A DNA stretch of 58,984 nt, filler included, from Sluysia triapertura (Eukaryota), in the NCBI GenBank assembly GCA_046118255.1. It is 5 parts of 5 records of this genome, joined end to end, with 100 filler letters (N's around TTAATTAATTAA, not from the genome) between each part and the next. Parts side by side here need not be neighbours in the genome. Positions count along the whole stretch, not along the records: positions 47,818 to 58,984 come from JBJNIA010188000.1; 4 more parts are not named here. One strand, 5' to 3'. The stretch's first letter is position 1. Each line of letters opens with the position of its first letter. The translations under genes were made by a program, and so were the position numbers. Positions 41,971 through 58,984 of the stretch are shown here, in pieces. The notes beneath the pieces are model-generated. The model ran no database searches. It worked only from the letters and a program-made list of their open reading frames with translations, and was not told the origin of the DNA.

Positions 41971-42027
41971 TGTAGGACGGAGCTGATAGCTTAGTGGTCA
42001 GAACATCGAAATCTGGTCAGTCCATTT
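41971..42027 (+). mobile_element. tRNA-Ala-like element copy B (internally deleted)
   Basis: tgtaggacggagctgatagcttagtggtcagaacatcgaa...ctggtcagtccattt: 5' terminus, A box, acceptor 3' strand. Confidence 0.75.
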
Positions 42028-47817: not shown

Positions 47818-48359
47818 ATATTATATGATATCATATAAATCACTGATATGAAGACAACTAATTGCCATTCTTATATATAAGTGTTGTGATTTCGATGATT
47901 TTCTGTAATTATTTAGTAATTTTTGAAATTAGATGGCATCAACATCATTACAATATTAGGTTGCTATCTTTGGATGCTGAGTTTGAGTGGTACTCATTTT
48001 TTATTGTTTAAATAAGTTTCTCTGATCGCGATGAGATTTCTTTGGGTAATATTCATCACCAAAGTGTTGGCTGATGCCCATAGTTTCTTCGCATGTATAA
48101 CCATGGTAACCACAGTATTGTAGGTATGCAAAACAATATTATATATGAATTATACAAGTAGGGTCGATTTTCTGATTAAGTGATGCAACTTATATACGCC
48201 GCGATGATATTTCTGAAGTCTAATTTATACATCGCAAATACCCTAAATATAATAGGCTCATTCCCACCAATCAAAGCTAATTATTAAAAACAATTTCCAT
48301 TTACTAATACTAGTAGATACGAATATGTAATATTATTCACAATACAGTTCGAATCTAAC

Positions 48360-48513
48360 CTCTCCAAGGACATCCCAGAAGTGCAAATCTAAGGCACACT
48401 TCCATTTTTCGATGCGGGCTACTCGATAAAGGATAGAGTCGAAATTTTTCTACAATTATTGTCTTTATGTTTATTCGATTCTGACTTCTGGCATCTTGGT
48501 TAGCTTCCAGGAT
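48360..48513 (-). CDS. DDR: Discoidin domain exon (ILEANQD...FRLYP...VCLRFALLGCPWR)
   Basis: AG/GT boundaries; matches DDR VCLRVELYGCxW. Not in the ORF track. Confidence 0.9.
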
Positions 48514-49252
48514 CTGAATAAATTAATTACTGTTTACATCGTAAGAAGAAATGACAACTCTTTTCCTAGTCGTCGTCAGTGAATAAAGATCAAATATGAC
48601 AACCTTTCTTAATTGTTCTCACAACCTCTTCATCGAAATAAATGCGTTGTCAAACAAGCTTTATAATTATAATTATTTGCAATAAACATATTTTACATGC
48701 AGCATATTTTTCAAGTCAATAAGCTCCACACAGACACTAACCCTACAGCTTTGGCAGTACGAATATAGCAAAACGTGATTTTTGAGATTGTCCAAAGATA
48801 TTACACAGATTTTATTGGTTTCGATTTATCCAATAAAATCTGTAAATTTTAGAATTTTCCAATGAAAAATTGAATAATTTATTTAATATTCACAGTCACA
48901 AATTTAGAATTTCGAAAAAAATGATTGACGAAGGTTTATAATATAGAGCGATTATTGTAAACAATACAATGGAAATAGGATCCATATGTATTGTTGTATT
49001 CAAAGTATCATAATTCTAAAATTCGATATGCATGTTTGTGTTATCGAAATTAGTGCGGCTCACAGTTGATTGATAAGATATTCTGTTGTGCTTGTTCAAC
49101 ATGAAAATGTGAGCCCAAATCATTATGTTGTTGCATTGCGGATGTTAATCATTGATTGATTCACAAGTTTGTACAGTAACAACTAATTTATATTAACAAC
49201 TAGACATGTGTGCGTGTTGTGTCATGTCGCTCAACTAAACTATTAAACTAAC

Positions 49253-49330
49253 CGACACATTGTTGTTAATGTAATCTATCCAATGACCATCGCGGAAGTA
49301 TTTGATTTTCAATTTCGGTGTGTACAGGTC
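49253..49330 (-). CDS. DDR: Discoidin domain exon (DLYTPKLKIKYFRDGHWIDYINNNVS)
   Basis: AG/GT, phase 0/0; YxRDGxxW motif. Not in the ORF track. Confidence 0.88.
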
Positions 49331-49518
49331 CTGAATCGAATAGTAAATTTAATAAAGAGACACTTGTTGACTCGACTAATCTAATGAATACTACAGAATA
49401 TATTACTACTACGACTACTACTACCACCACCACTACCATCTTACCACTACCATCTTATTCTTATTCGTATTAGTATGCATTCGATTTTGAGTAAGTTTCA
49501 AAGTGAAATATTGCTTAC

Positions 49519-49805
49519 CGAAGAAGAGGACCCTTTTCCAGCCGTGAATAGCAGCTCAATCATCATGAGACGTTTCAGAAAATCAATCTCAATCCATTCG
49601 CTGCCGGACATACTCACAGAAACATTAGGACACCACGCCCCGGTCCCGCTTCCTTCGGACTGATACATAGGATTCATGAAGTCGGTAATCAGGCCGTAGA
49701 TTGGACCTGTACGAGGGTTTAAATAACTACTGGCATCCAAACTGTACTGGCAATCTGTGCATGTAGCACTACTCAACAAGCTGTCCTTGCAGTTATCTCG
49801 AACAT
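49519..49805 (-). CDS. DDR: Discoidin (F5/8 type C) domain exon, DDR-like receptor
   Basis: ttgtttag| acceptor, |gtaagc donor. VRDNCKDSL...LDASS...GTGAWCP...EWIEIDF...FTAGK; GxGAWCP is the DDR-type signature. Symbol is family-level only. Confidence 0.88.
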
Positions 49806-49838
49806 CTAAACAAGAAATAAATCATTAAAAATTTATTA

Positions 49839-49893
<55 letters not shown>

Positions 49894-51959
49894 TATAAAA
49901 ATCTTTATTTAAATATCAATATTATTATCCACATCGCGTATTGCCTTCTTTATATTTTCGAAATTCACCAGCCGACTAGTAATTATTGCTCTCTCATTCG
50001 ACACTACTAATTTGGTGAATTCCGACAGAAAGGTCGGACGATCAGAAGAGATTTTCAGTTAATTATAAAGATAAATAATCGTGTTTCGGAATGCAGCATC
50101 TTTTTTCATGGTCATACTATTTTCAAGGGCATCGTTAATAAGAATAAAGATGAATTAATAATTTTATGAACAATCGACATCGGTAATTGTGTACTCGATT
50201 TTAAATGATCGATTTTTTGATCTGTGTTAAACACAATAAGCAGAAATGTTGCGCGTGCATCAGTAAAATTCATGATGACGTAAGCTAAGTAAATATTTAT
50301 TCATTCTTCAAATTGAATACGAAATTGTTAATAAGTAATATACTGAGACAAATGTTTTGGTGTGTCATAGCAGCTAATAATAACGATAATAATAATGTGA
50401 GAAATTTTTAAATTTAAAATAAATCTAAAATATCTTGGTATTACTGAAGGTTCAAGAGGAAGAGCTTAAATTAAAACACAACATAAAAAGAAGCCAAAAA
50501 CACGTAGTGATCTACAGCACTTAATTAACAGGTGGAAAATGTTGCGAATTAAACTGATGCAATGTAATAATGAAGAAAGGTACGATGTTAGTAGAATTCA
50601 ACAAACCAATGATAATTACATATTCCATGCGGTCTCTCTGAGACTATTCGTAATTATTTACACGGTCTGCTCATAAAAGAAGTGTTTCATATTTGTGTGT
50701 CACGAACTTACTAGAACTAACTCTGGCTTCAGAAACGAGTTCAGCATTAACTTGGGCCATACAGACACTGATGCGACCTGTTTACAGCGAGGTACCACAG
50801 TAACACTGCATCTACAAGTAAGAGGCTTAGGTTGATTGTCGCCAGTTGAAGTTTAAATAGATAAATTTTTATTACAGTACATAAAATTGTAATATAAAAT
50901 ATAAATTTAGTATTTTATTGATTTTCTGAGTTTTTCAATACCTCTACACATTTCAATCTTTCCCAAGTATCCAATACTGTATTTTTTAACTCAAAAAATG
51001 GAAAAGTATTGCCAAAAAGTTAACAGATCAAGACATGTGATATCCAATTATTTGGATAATAGTTATAAAAAGCAACGGAAACAGGTTTATTCGATACATT
51101 TATAAATTCTAGCTCACTTCGATTAACAAGGAATGTGGCAACGAATTTTTTACATTCATTGTTTTTTGAGATTTTATAAATTAAAATCGATCATTTTTCA
51201 TGAGGCATCGATATTTTTAGCGAGCAATAAATTTTTTTCTTTAATAATATCAAATAAAGGTCACAACGTGCTAATTATTTTAATTAATTTTAAAAAATTA
51301 ATTTAATTAATTATGTTATTGAATTTTTGACAAATAACATTACATAAAATCTTGTATGTCACATGTATGAAAGAGGAATAGCATAACTTATCAAAGTTCT
51401 CGTCAAACTTCAAATACGTTATTCCACATGTTGTATCGCTTGTAAGTAAATAACTAATGTATTATTTTTTAAATAAATTTTTTACACAGTTCTTTATTGT
51501 GTAATTTTGATTTTTTGTCTTTTTTACTATTTTTTAATTCTCAGTAAATTTGTACATTCTTGTATGAAATGGCTCTGGACTGATTGGGTAAATAAAATCA
51601 TTTTAATATTGGCTAAATGTTAAAGATAATAAAGGATAATAAATATATAGTCTATAAAGTATAGTCTATACACTGAATCCTTCGAATTAAAAAAGTTTTC
51701 GAGAATGGCTCATTTTTTAAACAAGAGCACCTTTAATAACATCGGCGACGTAAAAATGGCTATGAAAAACTATGCTTTGAAAATTTTCTAAAAAGAATTT
51801 TATTAAAAGAAAAAAGAAAGATGACAATTAACGCCCAAGAAAAACGCAGAAGAAGGAACAATGTAATTTTGATAATAATTCCAAATATTTTAGCATTATT
51901 TTTAGAACAATGCTATTATTTTTGTGTTTGACATTTTTTCATCATCAAACTTCATAAGT

Positions 51960-52482
51960 TATACTTTATTATTGTAAGATCATTTGGAATTCAAAAATGT
52001 GTTTTTCTTTGGCTTTATTAATATTTGCTAGCCTGGCAGCTTGGAAACTCTCCAGATATGAATCCCATAGAAAATCTGTGAGAGATTGTCAAAAGGAAAG
52101 TTTCAACCACCAGGACAGAACTTATTGAAACCCTGATAAAAGTATGGCATCACGATGACGAGATCAAAGACTTGTGCTCCAAGCTGATTCGTGGCATGTC
52201 TTTAAGGATCAGGAAATTATTGGATAACAAAGTACTGACACAACAGTTTGTACATATTTGATTTGTAGTAAATTGTGTTATCACATTCTACATAAATAAA
52301 ATTTATCTATGTTTTGGATCTCAGTATTTTATCTATTATTTTACTGTCACCAGAATTTGTTGGATGAAGTAGTAATTATATGTTTTATACACTTTGATTA
52401 ATAGTTTCATAGTTTGCTTGGAATATGTTGAATTTTATCACAAAATGTTAGTCTGTAGTCTAATAATTTGGCCACTACTCTA
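51960..52482 (+). mobile_element. Tc1-like 3' fragment, same family as 31555-32087
   Basis: GNSPDMNPIENL..IVK; shared 3' UTR and TIR taataatttggccact. Confidence 0.88.
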
Positions 52483-52807
52483 CAGTAAGGTGTATTCATA
52501 GAAAATTAGGTCGAAAAACAATTGACCCAATATTGACCAATGGAGTTTCTAGAAGCTGACTGTGCATCAGAAATTGAATATCATTGGCGAATCGATTTGC
52601 ACAAGTCAGAACATTATTTTTAATGAATAAAATTCTGCTGATTACATTCCATTCAGAAAACAACATACATTTTTCATTTGAAAATAAAAGAATAAGAAAA
52701 AATACAAAAAAATATACAAAATACAAAATAAAAACAAGAAGATAAAAAGATGACTGAGAACAACCTGAGTAGGATATAATAATAATATGATATAATAATA
52801 ATAATAA

Positions 52808-52838
<31 letters not shown>

Positions 52839-53144
52839 AATATATTAGTGATTCATTTTTCAGTGCACACATGCACGATCTCCTCCATTATTCTGCCAGT
52901 GTGTTCCGTAGCCATTCCAATATTGGCGAGTAAATTAATAACGATTTAAAATGATAACTTTGAATATTGAAGTAAAGATGAAAGAACGATATTATTATGA
53001 GATTCAGGAGATCTATTTTATTGAGAGGCTTTACTCGTTTCTTTATGACTCATTTTACTTTAATAAATCATCCAATCAGAAATAACAATTATTGATATAG
53101 TTAATTTTTCAAATTTTAAAATTATTCACTTTCAATCTACATTT

Positions 53145-53460
53145 ATTAATATTATTATCATTATTATGATTATAATTATTATTTATTATCATTATTATTA
53201 TAAATATTATCATTATTAATATCGTTATTGTCATTATTATTATTATTATTATCATTACTATTATCAATATTATCATTACTATTATTAATATTATCACTAT
53301 TATTATCATTATTATTACCATTATCAATATATTATCATTATTATCATCATTATTATTATTACCATTATCATTATTATCATCACTATTATTATCATTATTA
53401 TCATCACTATTATTATCATTATTATTATTATCATTATTATCATTACTATCATCATCATTT
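53145..53460. repeat. (ATT/ATC)n low-complexity tract
   Basis: Direct reading; source of spurious poly-I/L/Y/H ORFs. Confidence 0.92.
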
Positions 53461-54933
53461 TACAATTCATAAATTCTTATGATTCTAATAATCTGAGAAA
53501 TCCAAATCGTCATCATCAATGATCACACACAGCTAATACAATAGCATGTCCATGAATGTTATATATACAAGTATTCCTAGTCCCCAATATCAATCCATGC
53601 ACACTGATATCTCCATGTAAACACGACATATACACACCACAAGCACGTGTTCGAATCAAATCGATCAAACTGAATTCCGAAGTGCTATGTGGACATCATT
53701 TAAAATATCAATACACTAGTCATTTATAATATATGTTTGAGATGATTGATGTTATTTTCAATATTTACATGGTGCACCTCGTCACCTCACACAGGAACCG
53801 CATCCTGTGTGCATGTCATTGTATTTCTAGTTTTGTGTGGCTCAAATAATTAATTATTAAATAGTGGACAAATCTTGCAATACAAAAATTCGATTCAGTC
53901 CAGAAAATACGAGTGGCGCAACAGAAAATATATATTATGTGGTAAGAGTAAAGAACGAAGAAAAAGTCAGTGTTCATGACTAGAATGATTCATAGATATT
54001 TGACTTCACGGAAGCCATGAAGGACTGACAAATGAAATTCTGCAATTAATTGAGTGGACAAAAACATGAAGAGTGTTTAGAAATGATTGAGAACCATTGA
54101 AATAGTGAAACAGGTTGCCAGGGTGTCAAGAAAATATATTGTTCTTAGTATTTCAAAAATAATTCAACGAGTACAACTTGGACTCGAAATTGGTAGCGCG
54201 ACGGAATGCTGTGTTGTGTTGTGTTGCGTCACACATGCATGATTGCGTCAGAAAAGTGCTCGATCTAGATTGTGTGTGTCTTCTTGGAAATTCGAAAAAA
54301 AAGCGAAATATATTATAAATTCACATTTATTTACAACCAGCTGAACGATATTCTACAGAAATCAGTCATAATGCGAACTCGCACTTGAGAGTAATATCAT
54401 CATAGAAAATTTTTATGTTTACCACCGCACCGCACCACACCACAATCGCAACATCAATTCATTTATTCACAACTGTGTTTGTTTACATAAACAATCATGT
54501 TTTATTTGTTTACTTACTTCTTTGATTATCTGCAGCAAAAAGTTATGTTTACCCATTCATATTCGAAATTATTATCATTAGTAATGATCGGTACAACATT
54601 TAAATATTGAAGATGTAATTAAAATAATTGTTTCAGAAATTAATCTACCATCATGCCTTTATTTAAATATATTATTGAGGACAACGGAAATTGGATTTAC
54701 AGCAATACAAGAAAATGGGTCATATACTTTCGTGTAATAATTAATTATGTTTCATTGTCTTCNNNNNNNNNNNNNNNNNNNNNNNNNNNNNNNNNNNNNN
54801 NNNNNNNNNNNNNNNNNNNNNNNNNNNNNNNNNNNNNNNNNNNNNNNNNNNNNNNNNNNNNNNNNNNNNNNNNNNNNNNNNNNNNNNNNNNNGAGGTGCC
54901 ACTTGGTATGGTTGACTATTCTAATCTGAAAAT

Positions 54934-55020
54934 TATTAGACGAGGCTGATAGAGCATTCGAACTGCGCACGAGAGGTCCCGGGTTCGATCCCCGATCAGT
55001 CCATTTTATGAAGTCTAACA
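54934..55020 (+). mobile_element. tRNA-Ala-like element copy C (D-loop deleted)
   Basis: tattagacgaggctgatagagcattcgaactgcgcacgagaggtcccgggttcgatccccgatcagtccattttatgaagtctaaca. Confidence 0.85.
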
Positions 55021-56383
55021 TCATCATCACCATCATTTTCATCAACTCATTCTTTTACCATCATCATCACAATTATCACCATTATTATCATTATCGTCAT
55101 CATTATCATCATAACACTTATTATTACCATCATCATCATCATCAAATTAGACTTGTCTCTATGACACGTTTTTACTGAATCACAATTTAATACACTTTCC
55201 AGTGTAATAGCGCAACCATGTGGCCGTGAACCTTCTCTTTAATAGTCTAATGTATCTTGTGTCAATTATTAGACCATGTTTGTTTGTACAGCAGAATTAA
55301 AAATAAAATTTCAAGTCAGTACCAAATGTATTTATTTTCGCACGATCTTCAGTGTCACAACAATTTGTGCAACTCAAACTGATCGTAATCACATAATCGC
55401 TTTACAAAACATTACTTTAATGATGACGACGATCATGGCAACAACAATAACAGCAACAATGATGATGATGATGATAATAATAATGTTAGTGATAATGATA
55501 ATATGAAGAAGATGATATTGATGATAATAATGATGGTAATGACGATGATGATGATAATTAAGATGATAATGATGATGATAATGACGACGACAATGGTGAC
55601 AATAATGTACAAGTATTATATTTTTTAGAAAATCATATGCAGTTATAACAGTTTAATCCCAACAAGTGTGTCAGACCTTATTCCTTATAAATAAGACAAA
55701 TAATTCCTTAGTAAACATGAATTCAAATACGAAGATTAATAATCTGTTTCTTACCAGTAGCCTTGGCTACAACTAATTATGAAATTCTCAATCAAAACAC
55801 ACACACAGACACAATTCATCAAATACTTTGCATTCGTTCCAGATATTTAAAATCAAATCAATATTAAATGTGAATTAGCATATCTCTGTGTATATGTTTC
55901 AATATCCAAGTGAAAATACTGAGTAAAGCATTTTGTCCGCAAANNNNNNNNNNNNNNNNNNNNNNNNNNNNNNNNNNNNNNNNNNNNNNNNNNNNNNNNN
56001 NNNNNNNNNNNNNNNNNNNNNNNNNNNNNNNNNNNNNNNNNNNNNNNNNNNNNNNNNNNNNNNNNNNNNNNNNNNNNNNNNNNNNNNNNNNNNNNNNNNN
56101 NNNNNNNNNNNNNNNNNNNNNNNNNNNNNNNNNNNNNNNNNNTTATTATGATAATATTGTCGTTGTGTATTGAAAGTGTGTTGCACCTATCCATTCACAG
56201 TGTTTCTTGATTTTATTATTACTAAAAATTAATTCTGTTATACGGTGGAATAGTTTGTTTTCATTATAATTCAGCTCGTTTGTTGAGAACTTTAATTTCA
56301 TTTCGAATGTCAAAAATATCTGCATATTACTGTTGGGGTACAGGCCTAACAATGACGAATAATTGACTACAATAAAACAAATT

Positions 56384-56467
56384 TGTTAGATAGCTCAGTG
56401 GTCAGAGAATCGAACTGCACAGCTATGAAGCGAGAAATGCTGGGTTCGATTCCCGGTCAGTCTAACA
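56384..56467 (+). mobile_element. tRNA-Ala-like element copy D (diverged)
   Basis: tgttagatagctcagtggtcagagaatcgaactgcac...gggttcgattcccggtcagtctaaca: A box, B box, and both TGTTAGA/TCTAACA termini. Confidence 0.82.
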
Positions 56468-58909
56468 ATAATATTAGTAGAATGATCATAGTATATTAAT
56501 AATAATTTAATAATATAAATTGTTTTCAAGCCATTTTTAAACAAAATGAAAGTTCATTATTTCATGTAATCAGTAAATAAAAATATCTGGTCAAACACAT
56601 ACACAAAAATAAAAATATAATAACGAATAATATGTAAAATATTTAAAATCTATTCGTAAAATCATCATCATCGAGTTTGGCTGCTTATATTGAAAATGAT
56701 ACATTGTCACAAATAATGTTGCATAGTGAAAATGTTACTGAGTTGATTTCAATCATTCAAATCATAATTTAATAAAATTATGCATTTTCGAAAATTCGAA
56801 ACTTTATTTTTGAAAATACAATTTTTGAATTAAAATAAATAAAACTATTCTCAAAAAAATGAATGCAATTTAATCGATTGTCTATGTAAAGTAAATTTCA
56901 TTGCCTCGGTTTTCATTGTTACAGTTTTCTACTTTAAAATAAGTAAGTTACAATTACATTTTGTTAAACATATAAAATAAAATTATTTATAAACATTAAA
57001 AATTAATTTTCATCAATGTACACTCTTTTTAGATCGAATTTGGAGCTAATATTCAGATAACAATGAAGAACTCCAGTTAAATTTAAATAAAGAACTTATT
57101 CTTGTGACACGAGACCAGAACTATGTAGATAAATTGATTTATTTCGATCAGTATTATGTTTTTTTTCGTATCTGTTGTTCAATATTCGTAAAAGATAGTA
57201 GCGTAAATAATAATACATCTTAGAAATTAATAAGACACTAATAAGGTTTCAGATATTGCAATATTTTAATAAAAAATAATAACTTACTGACAACATCAGA
57301 TGAAACAAATCCAATAATAAATAGGTAGAACAACATATTCAAAAAAGTAAAATTCATAACACTTTCATCATATTTTGAACACTAAATCGATCCCTACGCG
57401 ATATCACCAGTCAACTATTTTGGAATTGTGAAATGTAATTACGAATATTCAAAAATAGTGTTGCAAAAAACGACTTCGAATAGAATAATCGAATTAACCA
57501 ATCAGACTTTAAATTTGTATTATTATTAATCAAAAAATGTTTCATACTACATTGTGATGTGTATTTAGCATAGTAAAATATAAACACATTTTAAACATAA
57601 TAATAATATTAATAATAATAATAATAAAAATAATAATAATAATAAAGATAGAATAATAATAATTATTATAATACATTAATTCTTTATAAATATTACTATT
57701 ATTATTAATGAACATATAAACGACAGAATTATAATAACAATTTTATACATTATTCGAGTTGTAATTTCTTGTTCTATATATGTACAAGAAAACATATTTA
57801 TTATTATGATTTTACAAACAACCTTGATCTAAATATTGAGTTCTACTTTTACTACTACTGCAATTACGAGTACTACAAATTTACATTATGACTATAATAT
57901 TTGTCATTCAGCAATTGTGTTCATGTAAACATATAACTATAATGTTTTGGTTTTGAATTTAATTTTAATTATACATGAAAATGAGATCGTATATTACTTA
58001 TAGTCATTACTTATAATAATGAATGAAAAAGCGAATATTTTCTGAAATATTTAAACAAAATTTTGCACCATTTTTAATTATTCTTACTTATTTTTAAAAT
58101 ATTTAATTAATTGTATAATATTTCTAAATTACAATTTATGTATATGTAAATTATTTTTTAAAACATTTTTTACCTCCGATGTATACTCTTTTTTACAATT
58201 AACGCTTATTGAAATAAAAACTTTTACTTATTACTATAGTAGCACCGTTCAACACTCATGAAACACATCAAGTACGAAATCTCTCCGGAAACGCACCTGG
58301 AAATGGCTCGTTTAACTAATACTTTTGGTAGTAGCCTTATAACAGTTTATAAATTTGTATATTACTTACGACTAATATCCTAAATTATTATTTTTGACTT
58401 CATTGAAGTAAAATTTAAAAAAAGTTTGTTTAAAATTTGTTTGTCCCCAAATAACTTTTAGTTATTTCATTTTGATTTGTTTGTTTACATTTTTTTGTGA
58501 TCGTTGAACATAGGAAGACGTTGATCAAATTAATAAAAATTACATTAGTCACACCTTTATGAAATTTTCGACGTTGCTATTATACGAGCATGTGTAACTT
58601 AAATAATAAAGGAAATATGGAAAGATAGTATAGGATTTAAGCGGACCAGAATGAAATATTTTTGCAAACTAACTCTCAGTCTCATAAAATTGATAATTCT
58701 ATGAAATTTTTTTAATTGTCGAACTTTCAATTTCATTTGGATCATCTAATGTATTTCTAATTTGGAAATTTTTATTAACTTGAGGTTCTTTAGAAACTTT
58801 AGTAGTGTTTTGTTTAGCGTGTTCAAATTGTAGAAAAAAAGGATAAAGTGTAGAAGCAGAGTATGGACGCTTAAGAGAGAAAAAAGATTGCATTTTGTAG
58901 AAATGCAAT

Positions 58910-58910
<1 letters not shown>

Positions 58911-58968
<58 letters not shown>
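58911..58968. repeat. (TAA)n microsatellite
   Basis: Direct reading. Confidence 0.95.
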
Positions 58969-58969
<1 letters not shown>

Positions 58970-58984
58970 TATTAATTTATATTG

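What the first reader, a model, noticed from the sequence alone, without database searches (positions are those of the whole stretch)
54934..55020. ~100-bp mobile tRNA-Ala-like cassette enclosed by TGTTAGAC...GTCTAACA inverted termini (4 copies on 3 unlinked scaffolds)
Seen: copies at 11736-11801, 41971-42027, 54934-55020 and 56384-56467 give the consensus TGTTAGAC-GGGCTGA TA GCTC AGTGGTCA GAGC A TTCGA ACTGCGC ACGAG AGGTC CCGGG TTCGATC CCYGG TCAGTCC A-TTTT-AYGAA-GTCTAACA. That is a whole cloverleaf with A and B boxes, followed at once by a TTTT Pol III terminator, inside an 8-bp TG...CA inverted repeat. No single copy is complete. Established: SINEs begin near the Pol III start and end in a tail; TG...CA short inverted ends mark LTRs and TGT-ended DNA transposons such as Ginger; plant Cassandra TRIMs carry 5S sequence in their LTRs. 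Inference: both termini lie outside the predicted Pol III transcript, so simple SINE retroposition does not readily explain the copies. The element looks like a tRNA-bearing MITE, or the solo LTR of a tRNA-promoter TRIM, in an animal. I could not see clean TSDs.
Basis: partly seen in the sequence, partly recalled or inferred. Interest (0 to 1): 0.85.

Follow-up and report, generated by a model that had tools for sequence, protein, structure and literature searches.

The report
High-copy tRNA-Ala-derived short repeat
Two decayed copies of a very abundant ~100-base repeat derived from an alanine tRNA gene sit here; its ends do form an 8-base inverted repeat, but whether it spreads as a SINE, a tiny LTR or a MITE cannot be settled from this piece.

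Summary
The observation largely holds. Two same-strand copies (54934-55020, 56384-56467) are pseudo-tRNAs below Rfam's tRNA threshold. Copy 1 shows G3:U70, A73 and anticodon TGC, which points to tRNA-Ala(UGC).

Contigs of one public run show a huge family:
- 4757 contigs match.
- Summed depth is about 1.3 million over the last 50 bases, against about 18 for the single-copy flank.
- At least 550 contigs lose similarity exactly after GTCTAACA.
- The majority letter restores TGTTAGAC at the 5' end, so the inverted termini are a family trait.

The mechanism stays open.
- **SINE (about 0.45).** Prior for tRNA-derived repeats. Both copies have triplet-periodic or AT-rich DNA on the 3' side only. Copy 2 has a weak 13-base flanking direct repeat.
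- **Against SINE.** The flush TG...CA inverted ends, a conserved internal TTTT, and an amplified subfamily without box A.
- **Rivals.** A minimal Helenus-like tRNA LTR (known in animals since 2024) or a MITE, about 0.2 each. No PBS, G-rich PPT or 4-5-bp TSD was seen.

Roughly 1-2% of copies carry a further repeated 41-base module upstream. I rate this moderately interesting and see it as a variant of a known kind.

The parts
54934..55020 (+). Cassette copy 1 (D-arm/box-A-less subfamily): TATTAGAC, pseudo-tRNA, TTTT, ATGAA, GTCTAACA
   Evidence: Sequence. Its 3' 50 bases match the family majority except at one site with an 8% minority variant. Several other contigs share its D-arm deletion (records 4-7).
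54943..55003 (+). tRNA-like core of copy 1. Acceptor 54943-54949 pairs with 54996-55002, with G3:U70 and A73. Anticodon TGC is at 54964-54966 and box B at 54982-54992.
   Evidence: Rfam tRNA 18.2 bits, E 0.15, below the gathering score of 29. Pairing was read from the sequence.
55004..55007 (+). TTTT run (Pol III terminator-like) directly after the discriminator base, 13 bases before the repeat's end
   Evidence: No variant of 5% or more across the family.
55013..55020 (+). 3' terminal octamer GTCTAACA, the sharp end of the family
   Evidence: 362 + 188 contigs lose similarity at 55020/55021 and continue into unrelated AT-rich DNA. Summed depth falls about 1000-fold.
54893..54933 (+). Module R: a separate repeated 41-base stretch adjoining the 5' end of copy 1, cut on its left by an N run
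   Evidence: Summed depth 8.5-20 thousand; 92 contigs read A at 54928. Not similar to copy 2's upstream flank or to the cassette.
55019..55144 (+). Imperfect (CAT)n array starting in the last two bases of copy 1; a possible simple-repeat tail
   Evidence: TRF: period 3, 41.7 copies. Period-3 self-match is in the top 8% of windows in the piece.
56384..56467 (+). Cassette copy 2 (older): TGTTAGAT, box A, D-arm, 8-base insertion, box B, GTCTAACA. It lacks the 5' acceptor strand and the TTTT segment.
   Evidence: Sequence. Alignment to copy 1. Rfam tRNA 21.7 bits, E 0.018.
56468..56508 (+). Very AT-rich, triplet-periodic stretch after copy 2; tail-like
   Evidence: 5 G+C in the first 50 bases, which only 4.8% of windows match or beat. 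Period-3 score in the top 8.4%. The upstream flank is ordinary.
56371..56383 (+). Candidate direct repeat (left), AATAAAACAAATT, matching 56509-56521 at 11 of 13 positions
   Evidence: empirical P 0.035, uncorrected for the several lengths tried. Weak.
56509..56521 (+). Candidate direct repeat (right), AATAATATAAATT

Best explanation
**Shown.** The two stretches are dead, internally deleted copies of a very abundant short interspersed repeat derived from a tRNA-Ala(UGC) gene.

**Structure (inferred).** The full unit is about 100 bases:
- a 9-base leader beginning TGTTAGAC;
- a 73-base tRNA-like core with Pol III boxes A and B;
- TTTT;
- a 13-base end, ATGAAGTCTAACA.

**Most likely mechanism (inferred).** It is a simple tRNA-type SINE.
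- Pol III starts in the leader and reads through the weak T4.
- The RNA is copied into AT-rich DNA by the reverse transcriptase of a partner LINE.
- This leaves a variable AT-rich or triplet-repeat tail and variable target duplications.
- The leader/end complementarity would then be an RNA stem extending the acceptor stem.

**Composite subfamily.** A minority carry an extra upstream module (R).
For: **Family and abundance**
- 4757 contigs match.
- Summed depth is about 1.1-1.3 million at 54982-55003. The locus's own contig has depth 17.7. That suggests on the order of 10^4-10^5 copies, a rough figure only.
- At least 550 contigs run into different flanks.

**tRNA ancestry**
- Rfam alignments cover 54943-55003 and 56384-56464.
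- G3:U70, A73 and anticodon TGC are read directly from the sequence.
- Box A is present in copy 2 and box B in both copies.

**Features that fit a SINE**
- A sharp 3' end is combined with a heterogeneous 5' side.
- Copy 1 is followed at once by a 125-base (CAT)n array.
- Copy 2 is followed by 50 bases with only 5 G+C, while its upstream flank is ordinary.
- Both downstream flanks are in the top 8% for period-3 repetition, a joint probability of about 0.007. The upstream flanks are not.
- An 11/13 direct repeat brackets copy 2 plus its tail, P 0.035.
- The family's downstream consensus is pure A/T with short AAT/TTA runs.

**Prior (my own knowledge).** Nearly all high-copy tRNA-like repeats in animals are SINEs.
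Against: - An 8-base inverted repeat flush with both ends is not a SINE feature. By chance it would occur at roughly 10^-3 to 10^-4.
- TTTT is conserved 13 bases inside the 3' end. A terminated Pol III transcript would lack that end.
- A subfamily without box A and the D-arm has multiplied. Copy 1 and contig records 4-7 share the deletion, with summed depth of about 6 thousand across the junction.
- There is no poly(A) or fixed tail across the family. Downstream consensus agreement is only 0.42-0.43.
- Only about 0.1% of the depth continues into copy 1's (CAT)n.
- The tail and TSD evidence rests on two copies and on tests chosen after looking.
- Module R upstream of copy 1 is not expected for a plain SINE.
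Confidence: 0.45

Rival explanations
1. Minimal LTR of a Helenus-like TRIM (TRIMp3), mostly present as solo LTRs. TGTTAGAC(G) would be a tiny U3 with the integrase site. The tRNA unit from Pol III start to TTTT would be R. ATGAAGTCTAACA would be U5. Strand transfers during reverse transcription would rebuild both termini even though they lie outside the RNA. An LTR-retrotransposon integrase would insert the DNA copy.
For: - TGT...ACA termini are flush with the repeat, as in published Helenus LTR sequences.
- This model explains why the ends lie outside the Pol III unit and why TTTT is conserved at that position.
- Helenus occurs in six animal phyla. LTRs go down to 104 bp and internal parts down to 43 bp (PMC10886601).
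- Module R, next to the 5' side of the cassette in about 10^3 copy-equivalents, could be an internal region.
- An assembly gap lies just upstream of R.
Against: - No TGG-type PBS follows either copy.
- R ends ...CTAATCTGAAAAT (family majority A at 54928), not in a G-rich tract like the Helenus internal ends seen.
- No 4-5-bp duplication flanks either copy.
- The ratio of cassette 3' ends to R is about 60:1, and the copy number is far above the largest reported Helenus family, which has 5575 LTRs.
- The two local copies belong to different subtypes, so they are not a pair.
- The box-A-less subfamily and the 3'-only tails are unexplained.
- A unit of about 100 bases is below the published LTR range.
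Confidence: 0.2
2. MITE born from a tRNA-Ala gene whose flanks happened to form TG...CA inverted ends. It would move as DNA, driven by an integrase-like DDE transposase (for example Ginger-type), independently of its Pol III promoter.
For: - The family-level 8-base terminal inverted repeat sits at the ends of the unit.
- Internally deleted forms that keep both termini have multiplied, as in the box-A-less subfamily. Copy 2 also keeps both ends despite two deletions.
- Very high copy number and AT-rich flanks are common for MITEs (my own knowledge).
- The internal TTTT is irrelevant to DNA transposition.
Against: - I know of no described MITE that consists of a whole tRNA unit, so the prior is low.
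- The inverted repeat is short.
- No TSD is visible at either copy, including copy 1, whose 3' half equals the family majority.
- Simple or AT-rich DNA lies on the 3' side only.
- The 5' terminus is documented in far fewer contigs than the 3' terminus. Part of that is an alignment artefact of copy 1's deletions.
Confidence: 0.2
3. The cassette is not an independent element. It would be only the 3' portion of a longer repeat that includes R and whatever lies in the gap, for example a dimeric Twin-like SINE or a nested composite. The short copies would be truncations.
For: - R is conserved and adjoins the cassette in at least three listed contigs. It accounts for about half of the depth crossing 54928 to 54935.
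- R occurs with both D-arm-less and D-arm-bearing cassettes (records 1 and 3 carry 10-11 extra bases).
Against: - R has only about 1-2% of the depth of the cassette's 3' core.
- Copy 2 has no R.
- Records 4 and 5 begin at 54929 and 54932, next to TGTTAGAC.
Confidence: 0.1

Closest known systems
tRNA-derived SINEs (SINE2), especially 'simple' ones such as rodent ID elements, which derive from tRNA-Ala (my own knowledge)
   Same: A tRNA-like head with boxes A and B, a length of about 100 bases, very high copy number, dispersed AT-rich insertion sites and a 3'-anchored family structure.
   Different: It has flush 8-base TG...CA inverted termini, a conserved TTTT inside the unit and no poly(A) or fixed tail. 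A box-A-less subfamily has amplified.
Helenus (TRIMp3), non-autonomous LTR retrotransposons with a tRNA-like sequence in the LTR (Kojima 2024, PMC10886601)
   Same: TGT...ACA ends and a tRNA-like Pol III unit filling most of the repeat. Helenus is found in animals, has small LTRs (104 bp and up) and includes solo LTRs.
   Different: Here no PBS, no G-rich PPT and no 4-bp TSD is seen. The unit is shorter than any listed LTR. The copy number is more than 10 times that of the largest reported family.
Cassandra, plant TRIMs with 5S rRNA-derived LTRs (as summarised in PMC10886601)
   Same: The same idea of a Pol III gene unit inside a terminal repeat.
   Different: Cassandra is derived from 5S rRNA, not tRNA, and occurs in plants. 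It has a clear LTR-PBS-PPT-LTR structure, which is not shown here.
MITEs of integrase-like DNA transposons with TGT...ACA ends, such as Ginger (my own knowledge)
   Same: Short size, TG...CA inverted ends, and deletion derivatives that keep both ends.
   Different: Ginger inverted repeats are much longer and give 4-5-bp TSDs. Neither is seen here, and such elements have no tRNA content.
Twin SINE of Culex, two tRNA-related units joined by a 39-bp spacer (my own knowledge)
   Same: Possible parallel for the R-bearing subfamily: a 41-base module directly upstream of a box-A-less tRNA-like unit.
   Different: What lies upstream of R is hidden by an N run, so a left monomer is not shown.

Membership tests
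SINE2 (tRNA-derived SINE) | Internal Pol III promoter: box A and box B in a tRNA-related head | tested here: met
   Copy 2 has TAGCTCAGTGG and GGTTCGATTCC. Copy 1 has box B only. Rfam tRNA alignments support this. Soft-clipped contigs show the D-loop in the main family.
SINE2 (tRNA-derived SINE) | 3' tail (A-rich or simple repeat) after the unit | tested here: inconclusive
   Copy 1 is followed by (CAT)n. Copy 2 is followed by an AT-rich, period-3 stretch. The family-wide downstream consensus has no fixed tail, with agreement 0.42-0.43.
SINE2 (tRNA-derived SINE) | Variable-length target site duplications around the unit plus its tail | tested here: inconclusive
   Copy 2 has an 11/13 repeat, P 0.035. 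Copy 1 has none.
SINE2 (tRNA-derived SINE) | Partner LINE sharing or recognising the 3' end | not testable with these tools
   No further DNA of this genome could be fetched.
Helenus / TRIMp3 | tRNA-like sequence inside a terminal repeat with TG...CA ends | tested here: met
   Compare the published LTRs.
Helenus / TRIMp3 | Two direct LTRs enclosing a PBS next to the 5' LTR | tested here: not met
   The DNA after both copies starts TCATCATC / ATAATATT, with no TGG-type site. The two copies are of different subtypes and lie 1363 bases apart. A 5' LTR hidden in the N run cannot be excluded.
Helenus / TRIMp3 | Polypurine tract just upstream of the 3' LTR | tested here: not met
   Upstream of copy 1 is ...CTAATCTGAAAAT and upstream of copy 2 is ...AAAACAAATT. 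The Helenus internal ends seen are G-rich.
Helenus / TRIMp3 | 4-bp TSD in animals | tested here: not met
   Copy 1: AAAT versus TCAT. Copy 2: AATT versus ATAA. Copy 2 is old, and copy 1's left neighbour is a repeat.
MITE | Terminal inverted repeats at the exact ends of the repeated unit | tested here: met
   7 of 8 bases in each copy. The family majority gives 8 of 8. The 3' end is sharp. The 5' end is supported by copy 2, by records 4 and 5, and by the depth halving between 54928 and 54935.
MITE | Fixed-length TSD directly flanking the inverted repeats | tested here: not met
   None at either copy. With only two copies this is weak evidence.
MITE | Autonomous transposon with matching termini | not testable with these tools
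   No other DNA from this genome was accessible.
Functional tRNA-Ala gene | Intact cloverleaf scoring above the model threshold | tested here: not met
   ARAGORN finds none. Rfam scores are 18.2 and 21.7 bits, below 29. The folds are no better than shuffles.

The most novel reading that the evidence does not exclude
The unit is the smallest possible Pol III-driven terminal repeat. A complete tRNA-Ala transcription unit, from start site to TTTT, would act as 'R'. It would be bracketed only by 8-13-base integrase-type TG...CA attachment sites.

It would be mobilised through those ends, either as a Helenus-like mini-LTR or as a tRNA-born MITE, and not by a LINE. It would have amplified to 10^4-10^5 copies, far beyond any described TRIMp3 family.
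Probability: 0.35. Interest if true: 0.6.

Novelty: new variant of a known kind. Interest (0 to 1): 0.4.

Why it matters
If the TG...CA ends are what the mobilising enzyme recognises, this family would show how a bare tRNA gene can become a mobile element with almost no added sequence.

It would also be the most prolific Pol III-promoter element that is not moved by a LINE. Tens of thousands of copies would add TFIIIC/Pol III binding sites across the genome.

In either case the family inflates and confuses tRNA-gene prediction and SINE/MITE/LTR classification in this genome. If it is a plain SINE with a leader-trailer stem, it is a routine repeat with an odd detail.

Tried and rejected
**Attempts to fetch more copies (all failed)**
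- Exact-pattern scans of metagenome contigs, viral contigs and prokaryote genomes gave 0 hits.
- A protein-word search with the open frame across copy 1 (22) and with a nearby exon (28) found no candidates.
- Exact look-ups of three window ORFs found nothing on record.
- A phmmer search of 1.8 billion representatives gave two unrelated repeat proteins.
- A full-text search for six sequence strings gave 0 papers.

**Ideas rejected**
- Upstream homology between the two copies, suggested by MAFFT, is not above chance: P 0.47 (23).
- R is not a degenerate cassette half: P 0.46 (45). R also gave no Rfam 5S match.
- The 12-mer AAATTATTAGAC occurs three times, but the contexts share nothing else. It is probably low-complexity.
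- A TIR-TIR mini-palindrome at 52446-52465 is within chance.
- Copies 1 and 2 as the LTR pair of one element: different subtypes, no PBS or PPT.
- Functional tRNA genes: rejected.
- No further copies exist in the piece.

**Not done**
- I did not read or infer the N runs.
- I built no family consensus.

Full report
**What is in the window.** The piece (47818-58984) is AT-rich animal DNA with 28% G+C and two N runs (54763-54892 and 55946-56142). It holds two same-strand copies of the reported unit.

- Copy 1 (54934-55020) reads TATTAGAC, then G, then an acceptor strand, then ...AGCATTCGAACTGCGCACGAGAGG. Box B follows at 54982-54992, then the 3' acceptor strand, A, TTTT (55004-55007), ATGAA and GTCTAACA. 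It has no D-arm.
- Copy 2 (56384-56467) reads TGTTAGAT, then box A and the D-arm, an 8-base insertion, box B and GTCTAACA. It lacks the 5' acceptor strand and the CATTTTATGAAGT segment (alignment).
- A 20-base T-arm/acceptor pattern finds only these two sites, against none in 100 shuffles.
- No other copy exists in the piece.

**They are tRNA relics, not genes.** ARAGORN finds nothing. Rfam's tRNA model aligns 54943-55003 at 18.2 bits and 56384-56464 at 21.7 bits, below the gathering score of 29. Neither copy folds better than shuffled sequence. In copy 1 the acceptor pairing shows G3:U70 with discriminator A73, and the anticodon position reads TGC. These are the identity marks of tRNA-Ala(UGC), as I know them.

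**Family-level evidence.** One public run (coded X1, kept as contigs) holds 92% of the sampled words of this locus. It may be the sample the window was assembled from, so it is not independent support. I laid its contigs on 54894-55200 at 80% likeness.

- 4757 contigs matched.
- Summed contig depth is 1.09-1.33 million over 54982-55003. The locus's own contig (record 8) has depth 17.7. Depth of this kind is not a copy number, but it points to roughly 10^4-10^5 copies of the 3' core.
- 362 contigs lose similarity at 55020 and 188 at 55021. They continue for a median of 217-255 bases into unrelated A/T-rich sequence (consensus agreement 0.42-0.43).
- Depth drops about 1000-fold within 15 bases. 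The 3' end at GTCTAACA is therefore sharp, and the family is dispersed rather than tandem.
- Within the last 50 bases only one site (54990) has a variant above 5%. The TTTT and the terminal octamer are family-wide.
- At the 5' side, 71 contigs read G at 54935, which gives TGTTAGAC. 35 contigs read G at 54943.

The 8-base inverted termini are therefore a property of the family, not a coincidence in single copies.

**The 5' side is heterogeneous.**

- At least 628 contigs were soft-clipped at 54970-54975. Their clipped parts read ...(A)GTGGTAGAGCAT(T)CGAACTGCGCAG. The main family thus keeps the D-loop and differs from copy 1 by small indels.
- Because of this, the 30-fold depth step at 54971 is largely an alignment artefact. 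It is not proof of 5' truncation.
- Contig records 4-7 align across copy 1's D-arm deletion without a large gap, and summed depth there is about 6 thousand. A subfamily without box A has therefore itself multiplied.
- The 41 bases upstream of copy 1 (module R, 54893-54933) are also repeated: depth is 8.5-20 thousand, and 92 contigs read A at 54928.
- About half of that depth continues into TGTTAGAC. Three listed contigs span R plus the cassette.
- R resembles neither copy 2's upstream flank (P 0.47) nor the cassette (P 0.46).
- Copy 2, and records 4 and 5 (which start at 54929 and 54932), lack R.

TGTTAGAC therefore marks a real module boundary. In roughly 1-2% of copies the cassette is the 3' part of a longer unit, whose left side is hidden here by N.

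**Flanks.**

- Neither copy has a 2-8-bp direct repeat directly abutting its termini.
- Copy 1 runs straight into a 125-base imperfect (CAT)n array that begins in its last two bases.
- Copy 2 is followed by 50 bases with 5 G+C, a level reached by 4.8% of windows. Its upstream flank is ordinary.
- Both downstream flanks are in the top 8% of the piece for period-3 self-similarity, a joint probability of about 0.007. The upstream flanks are not.
- An 11/13 direct repeat (56371-56383 and 56509-56521) brackets copy 2 plus its tail-like stretch. Its P is 0.035, uncorrected.

They rest on only two copies and on tests chosen after looking.

**Weighing the mechanisms.**

- *SINE.* The prior favours it, as do the 3'-only tails, the candidate variable TSD and the 3'-anchored family structure. 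A 9-base leader is compatible with a Pol III start, and T4 followed by A is a weak terminator, perhaps weaker still in so AT-rich a genome (my own knowledge). Against it stand the flush TG...CA inverted repeat, the conserved TTTT 13 bases from the end, and the box-A-less subfamily.
- *LTR.* This reading fits the anatomy well. U3 would be the 8-9-base attachment site, R the tRNA unit from start to terminator, and U5 the last 13 bases. It also explains termini that lie outside the transcript. However, I see no PBS, no G-rich PPT and no 4-bp TSD. The unit is shorter than any Helenus LTR, and the copy number is far higher.
- *MITE.* This explains the termini and the promoter-less derivatives. It has no precedent I know of, no TSD here, and does not explain the one-sided tails.

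My odds are SINE 0.45, Helenus-like LTR 0.2, MITE 0.2, and merely part of a longer repeat 0.1.

**Comparison with what is known.** Kojima (2024, PMC10886601) named such elements Helenus. They occur in six animal phyla with 4-bp TSDs, LTRs of 104-323 bp and internal parts of 43-621 bp. Together with Cassandra and Ajax they form the group TRIMp3. None of the published Helenus sequences contains this family's diagnostic strings. I could not query Repbase or Dfam, so the family may already be catalogued.

**Limits.**

- Only two copies were visible, and only one reads call was available. Copy 1's own deletions blunt that call's view of the 5' end.
- The organism is coded.
- The N runs were not read or inferred.
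- I built no consensus. Only majority letters reported by the tool are quoted.

Noticed in passing
window 54893-54933: A 41-base module (R) next to copy 1 is itself a conserved repeat. Its summed contig depth is 8-20 thousand against about 18 for single-copy DNA. It is unrelated to the cassette, and its left side is cut by an N run.
   Followed up: partly
window 55019-55144 and 55459-55584: An imperfect (CAT)n array and an (ATG)n array of equal length (126 bases each) lie in inverted orientation around a 314-base spacer. They could form a large foldback.
   Followed up: no
window 49501-49779 (-): A likely coding exon. The protein-language-model search places it with F5/8 type C (discoidin) domains at scores of 0.93-0.94. 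Pfam and the word-based homologue search found nothing.
   Followed up: partly
window 47997-48131 (-): In another frame of this strand, by my own untested reading, the stretch gives an EGF-like ...GYHGYTCEE... motif. It may be a neighbouring exon of the same gene. The listed 45-aa ORF of this interval gave no Pfam hit; the EGF-like frame itself was not searched.
   Followed up: partly
window 52022-52258 (+): A remnant of a Tc1/mariner-type transposase C-terminus. By eye it reads ...SPDMNPIENL*EIVKRKV...ELIETLIKVWHH..., with a stop at 52079-52081. The 59-residue piece gave no Pfam hit.
   Followed up: partly
window 52458-52469 (-), 54930-54941 (+), 55263-55274 (+): The 12-mer AAATTATTAGAC, which forms copy 1's 5' edge, recurs three times against 0.45 expected. 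The contexts share nothing else. It is probably an (ATT)n-related low-complexity effect.
   Followed up: yes
window 52446-52465: TGTTAGTC-TGTA-GTCTAATA: both terminal octamers of the cassette (one mismatch each) lie 4 bases apart, like an element with its interior deleted. By my estimate this is within chance.
   Followed up: partly
window 56424-56430 versus 55008-55014: Copy 2's 8-base insertion in the anticodon region (CTATGAAG) contains the same TATGAAG that follows TTTT in copy 1, a segment that copy 2 lacks at its 3' end. One contig of the run also joins 55021 back to 54970. This hints at rearranged or tandem half-units.
   Followed up: no
window 54763-54892 and 55946-56142: The only two N runs of the piece lie 41 and 241 bases upstream of the two cassette copies. 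This is consistent with assembly breaks at this high-copy repeat. Their letters were not looked up.
   Followed up: no
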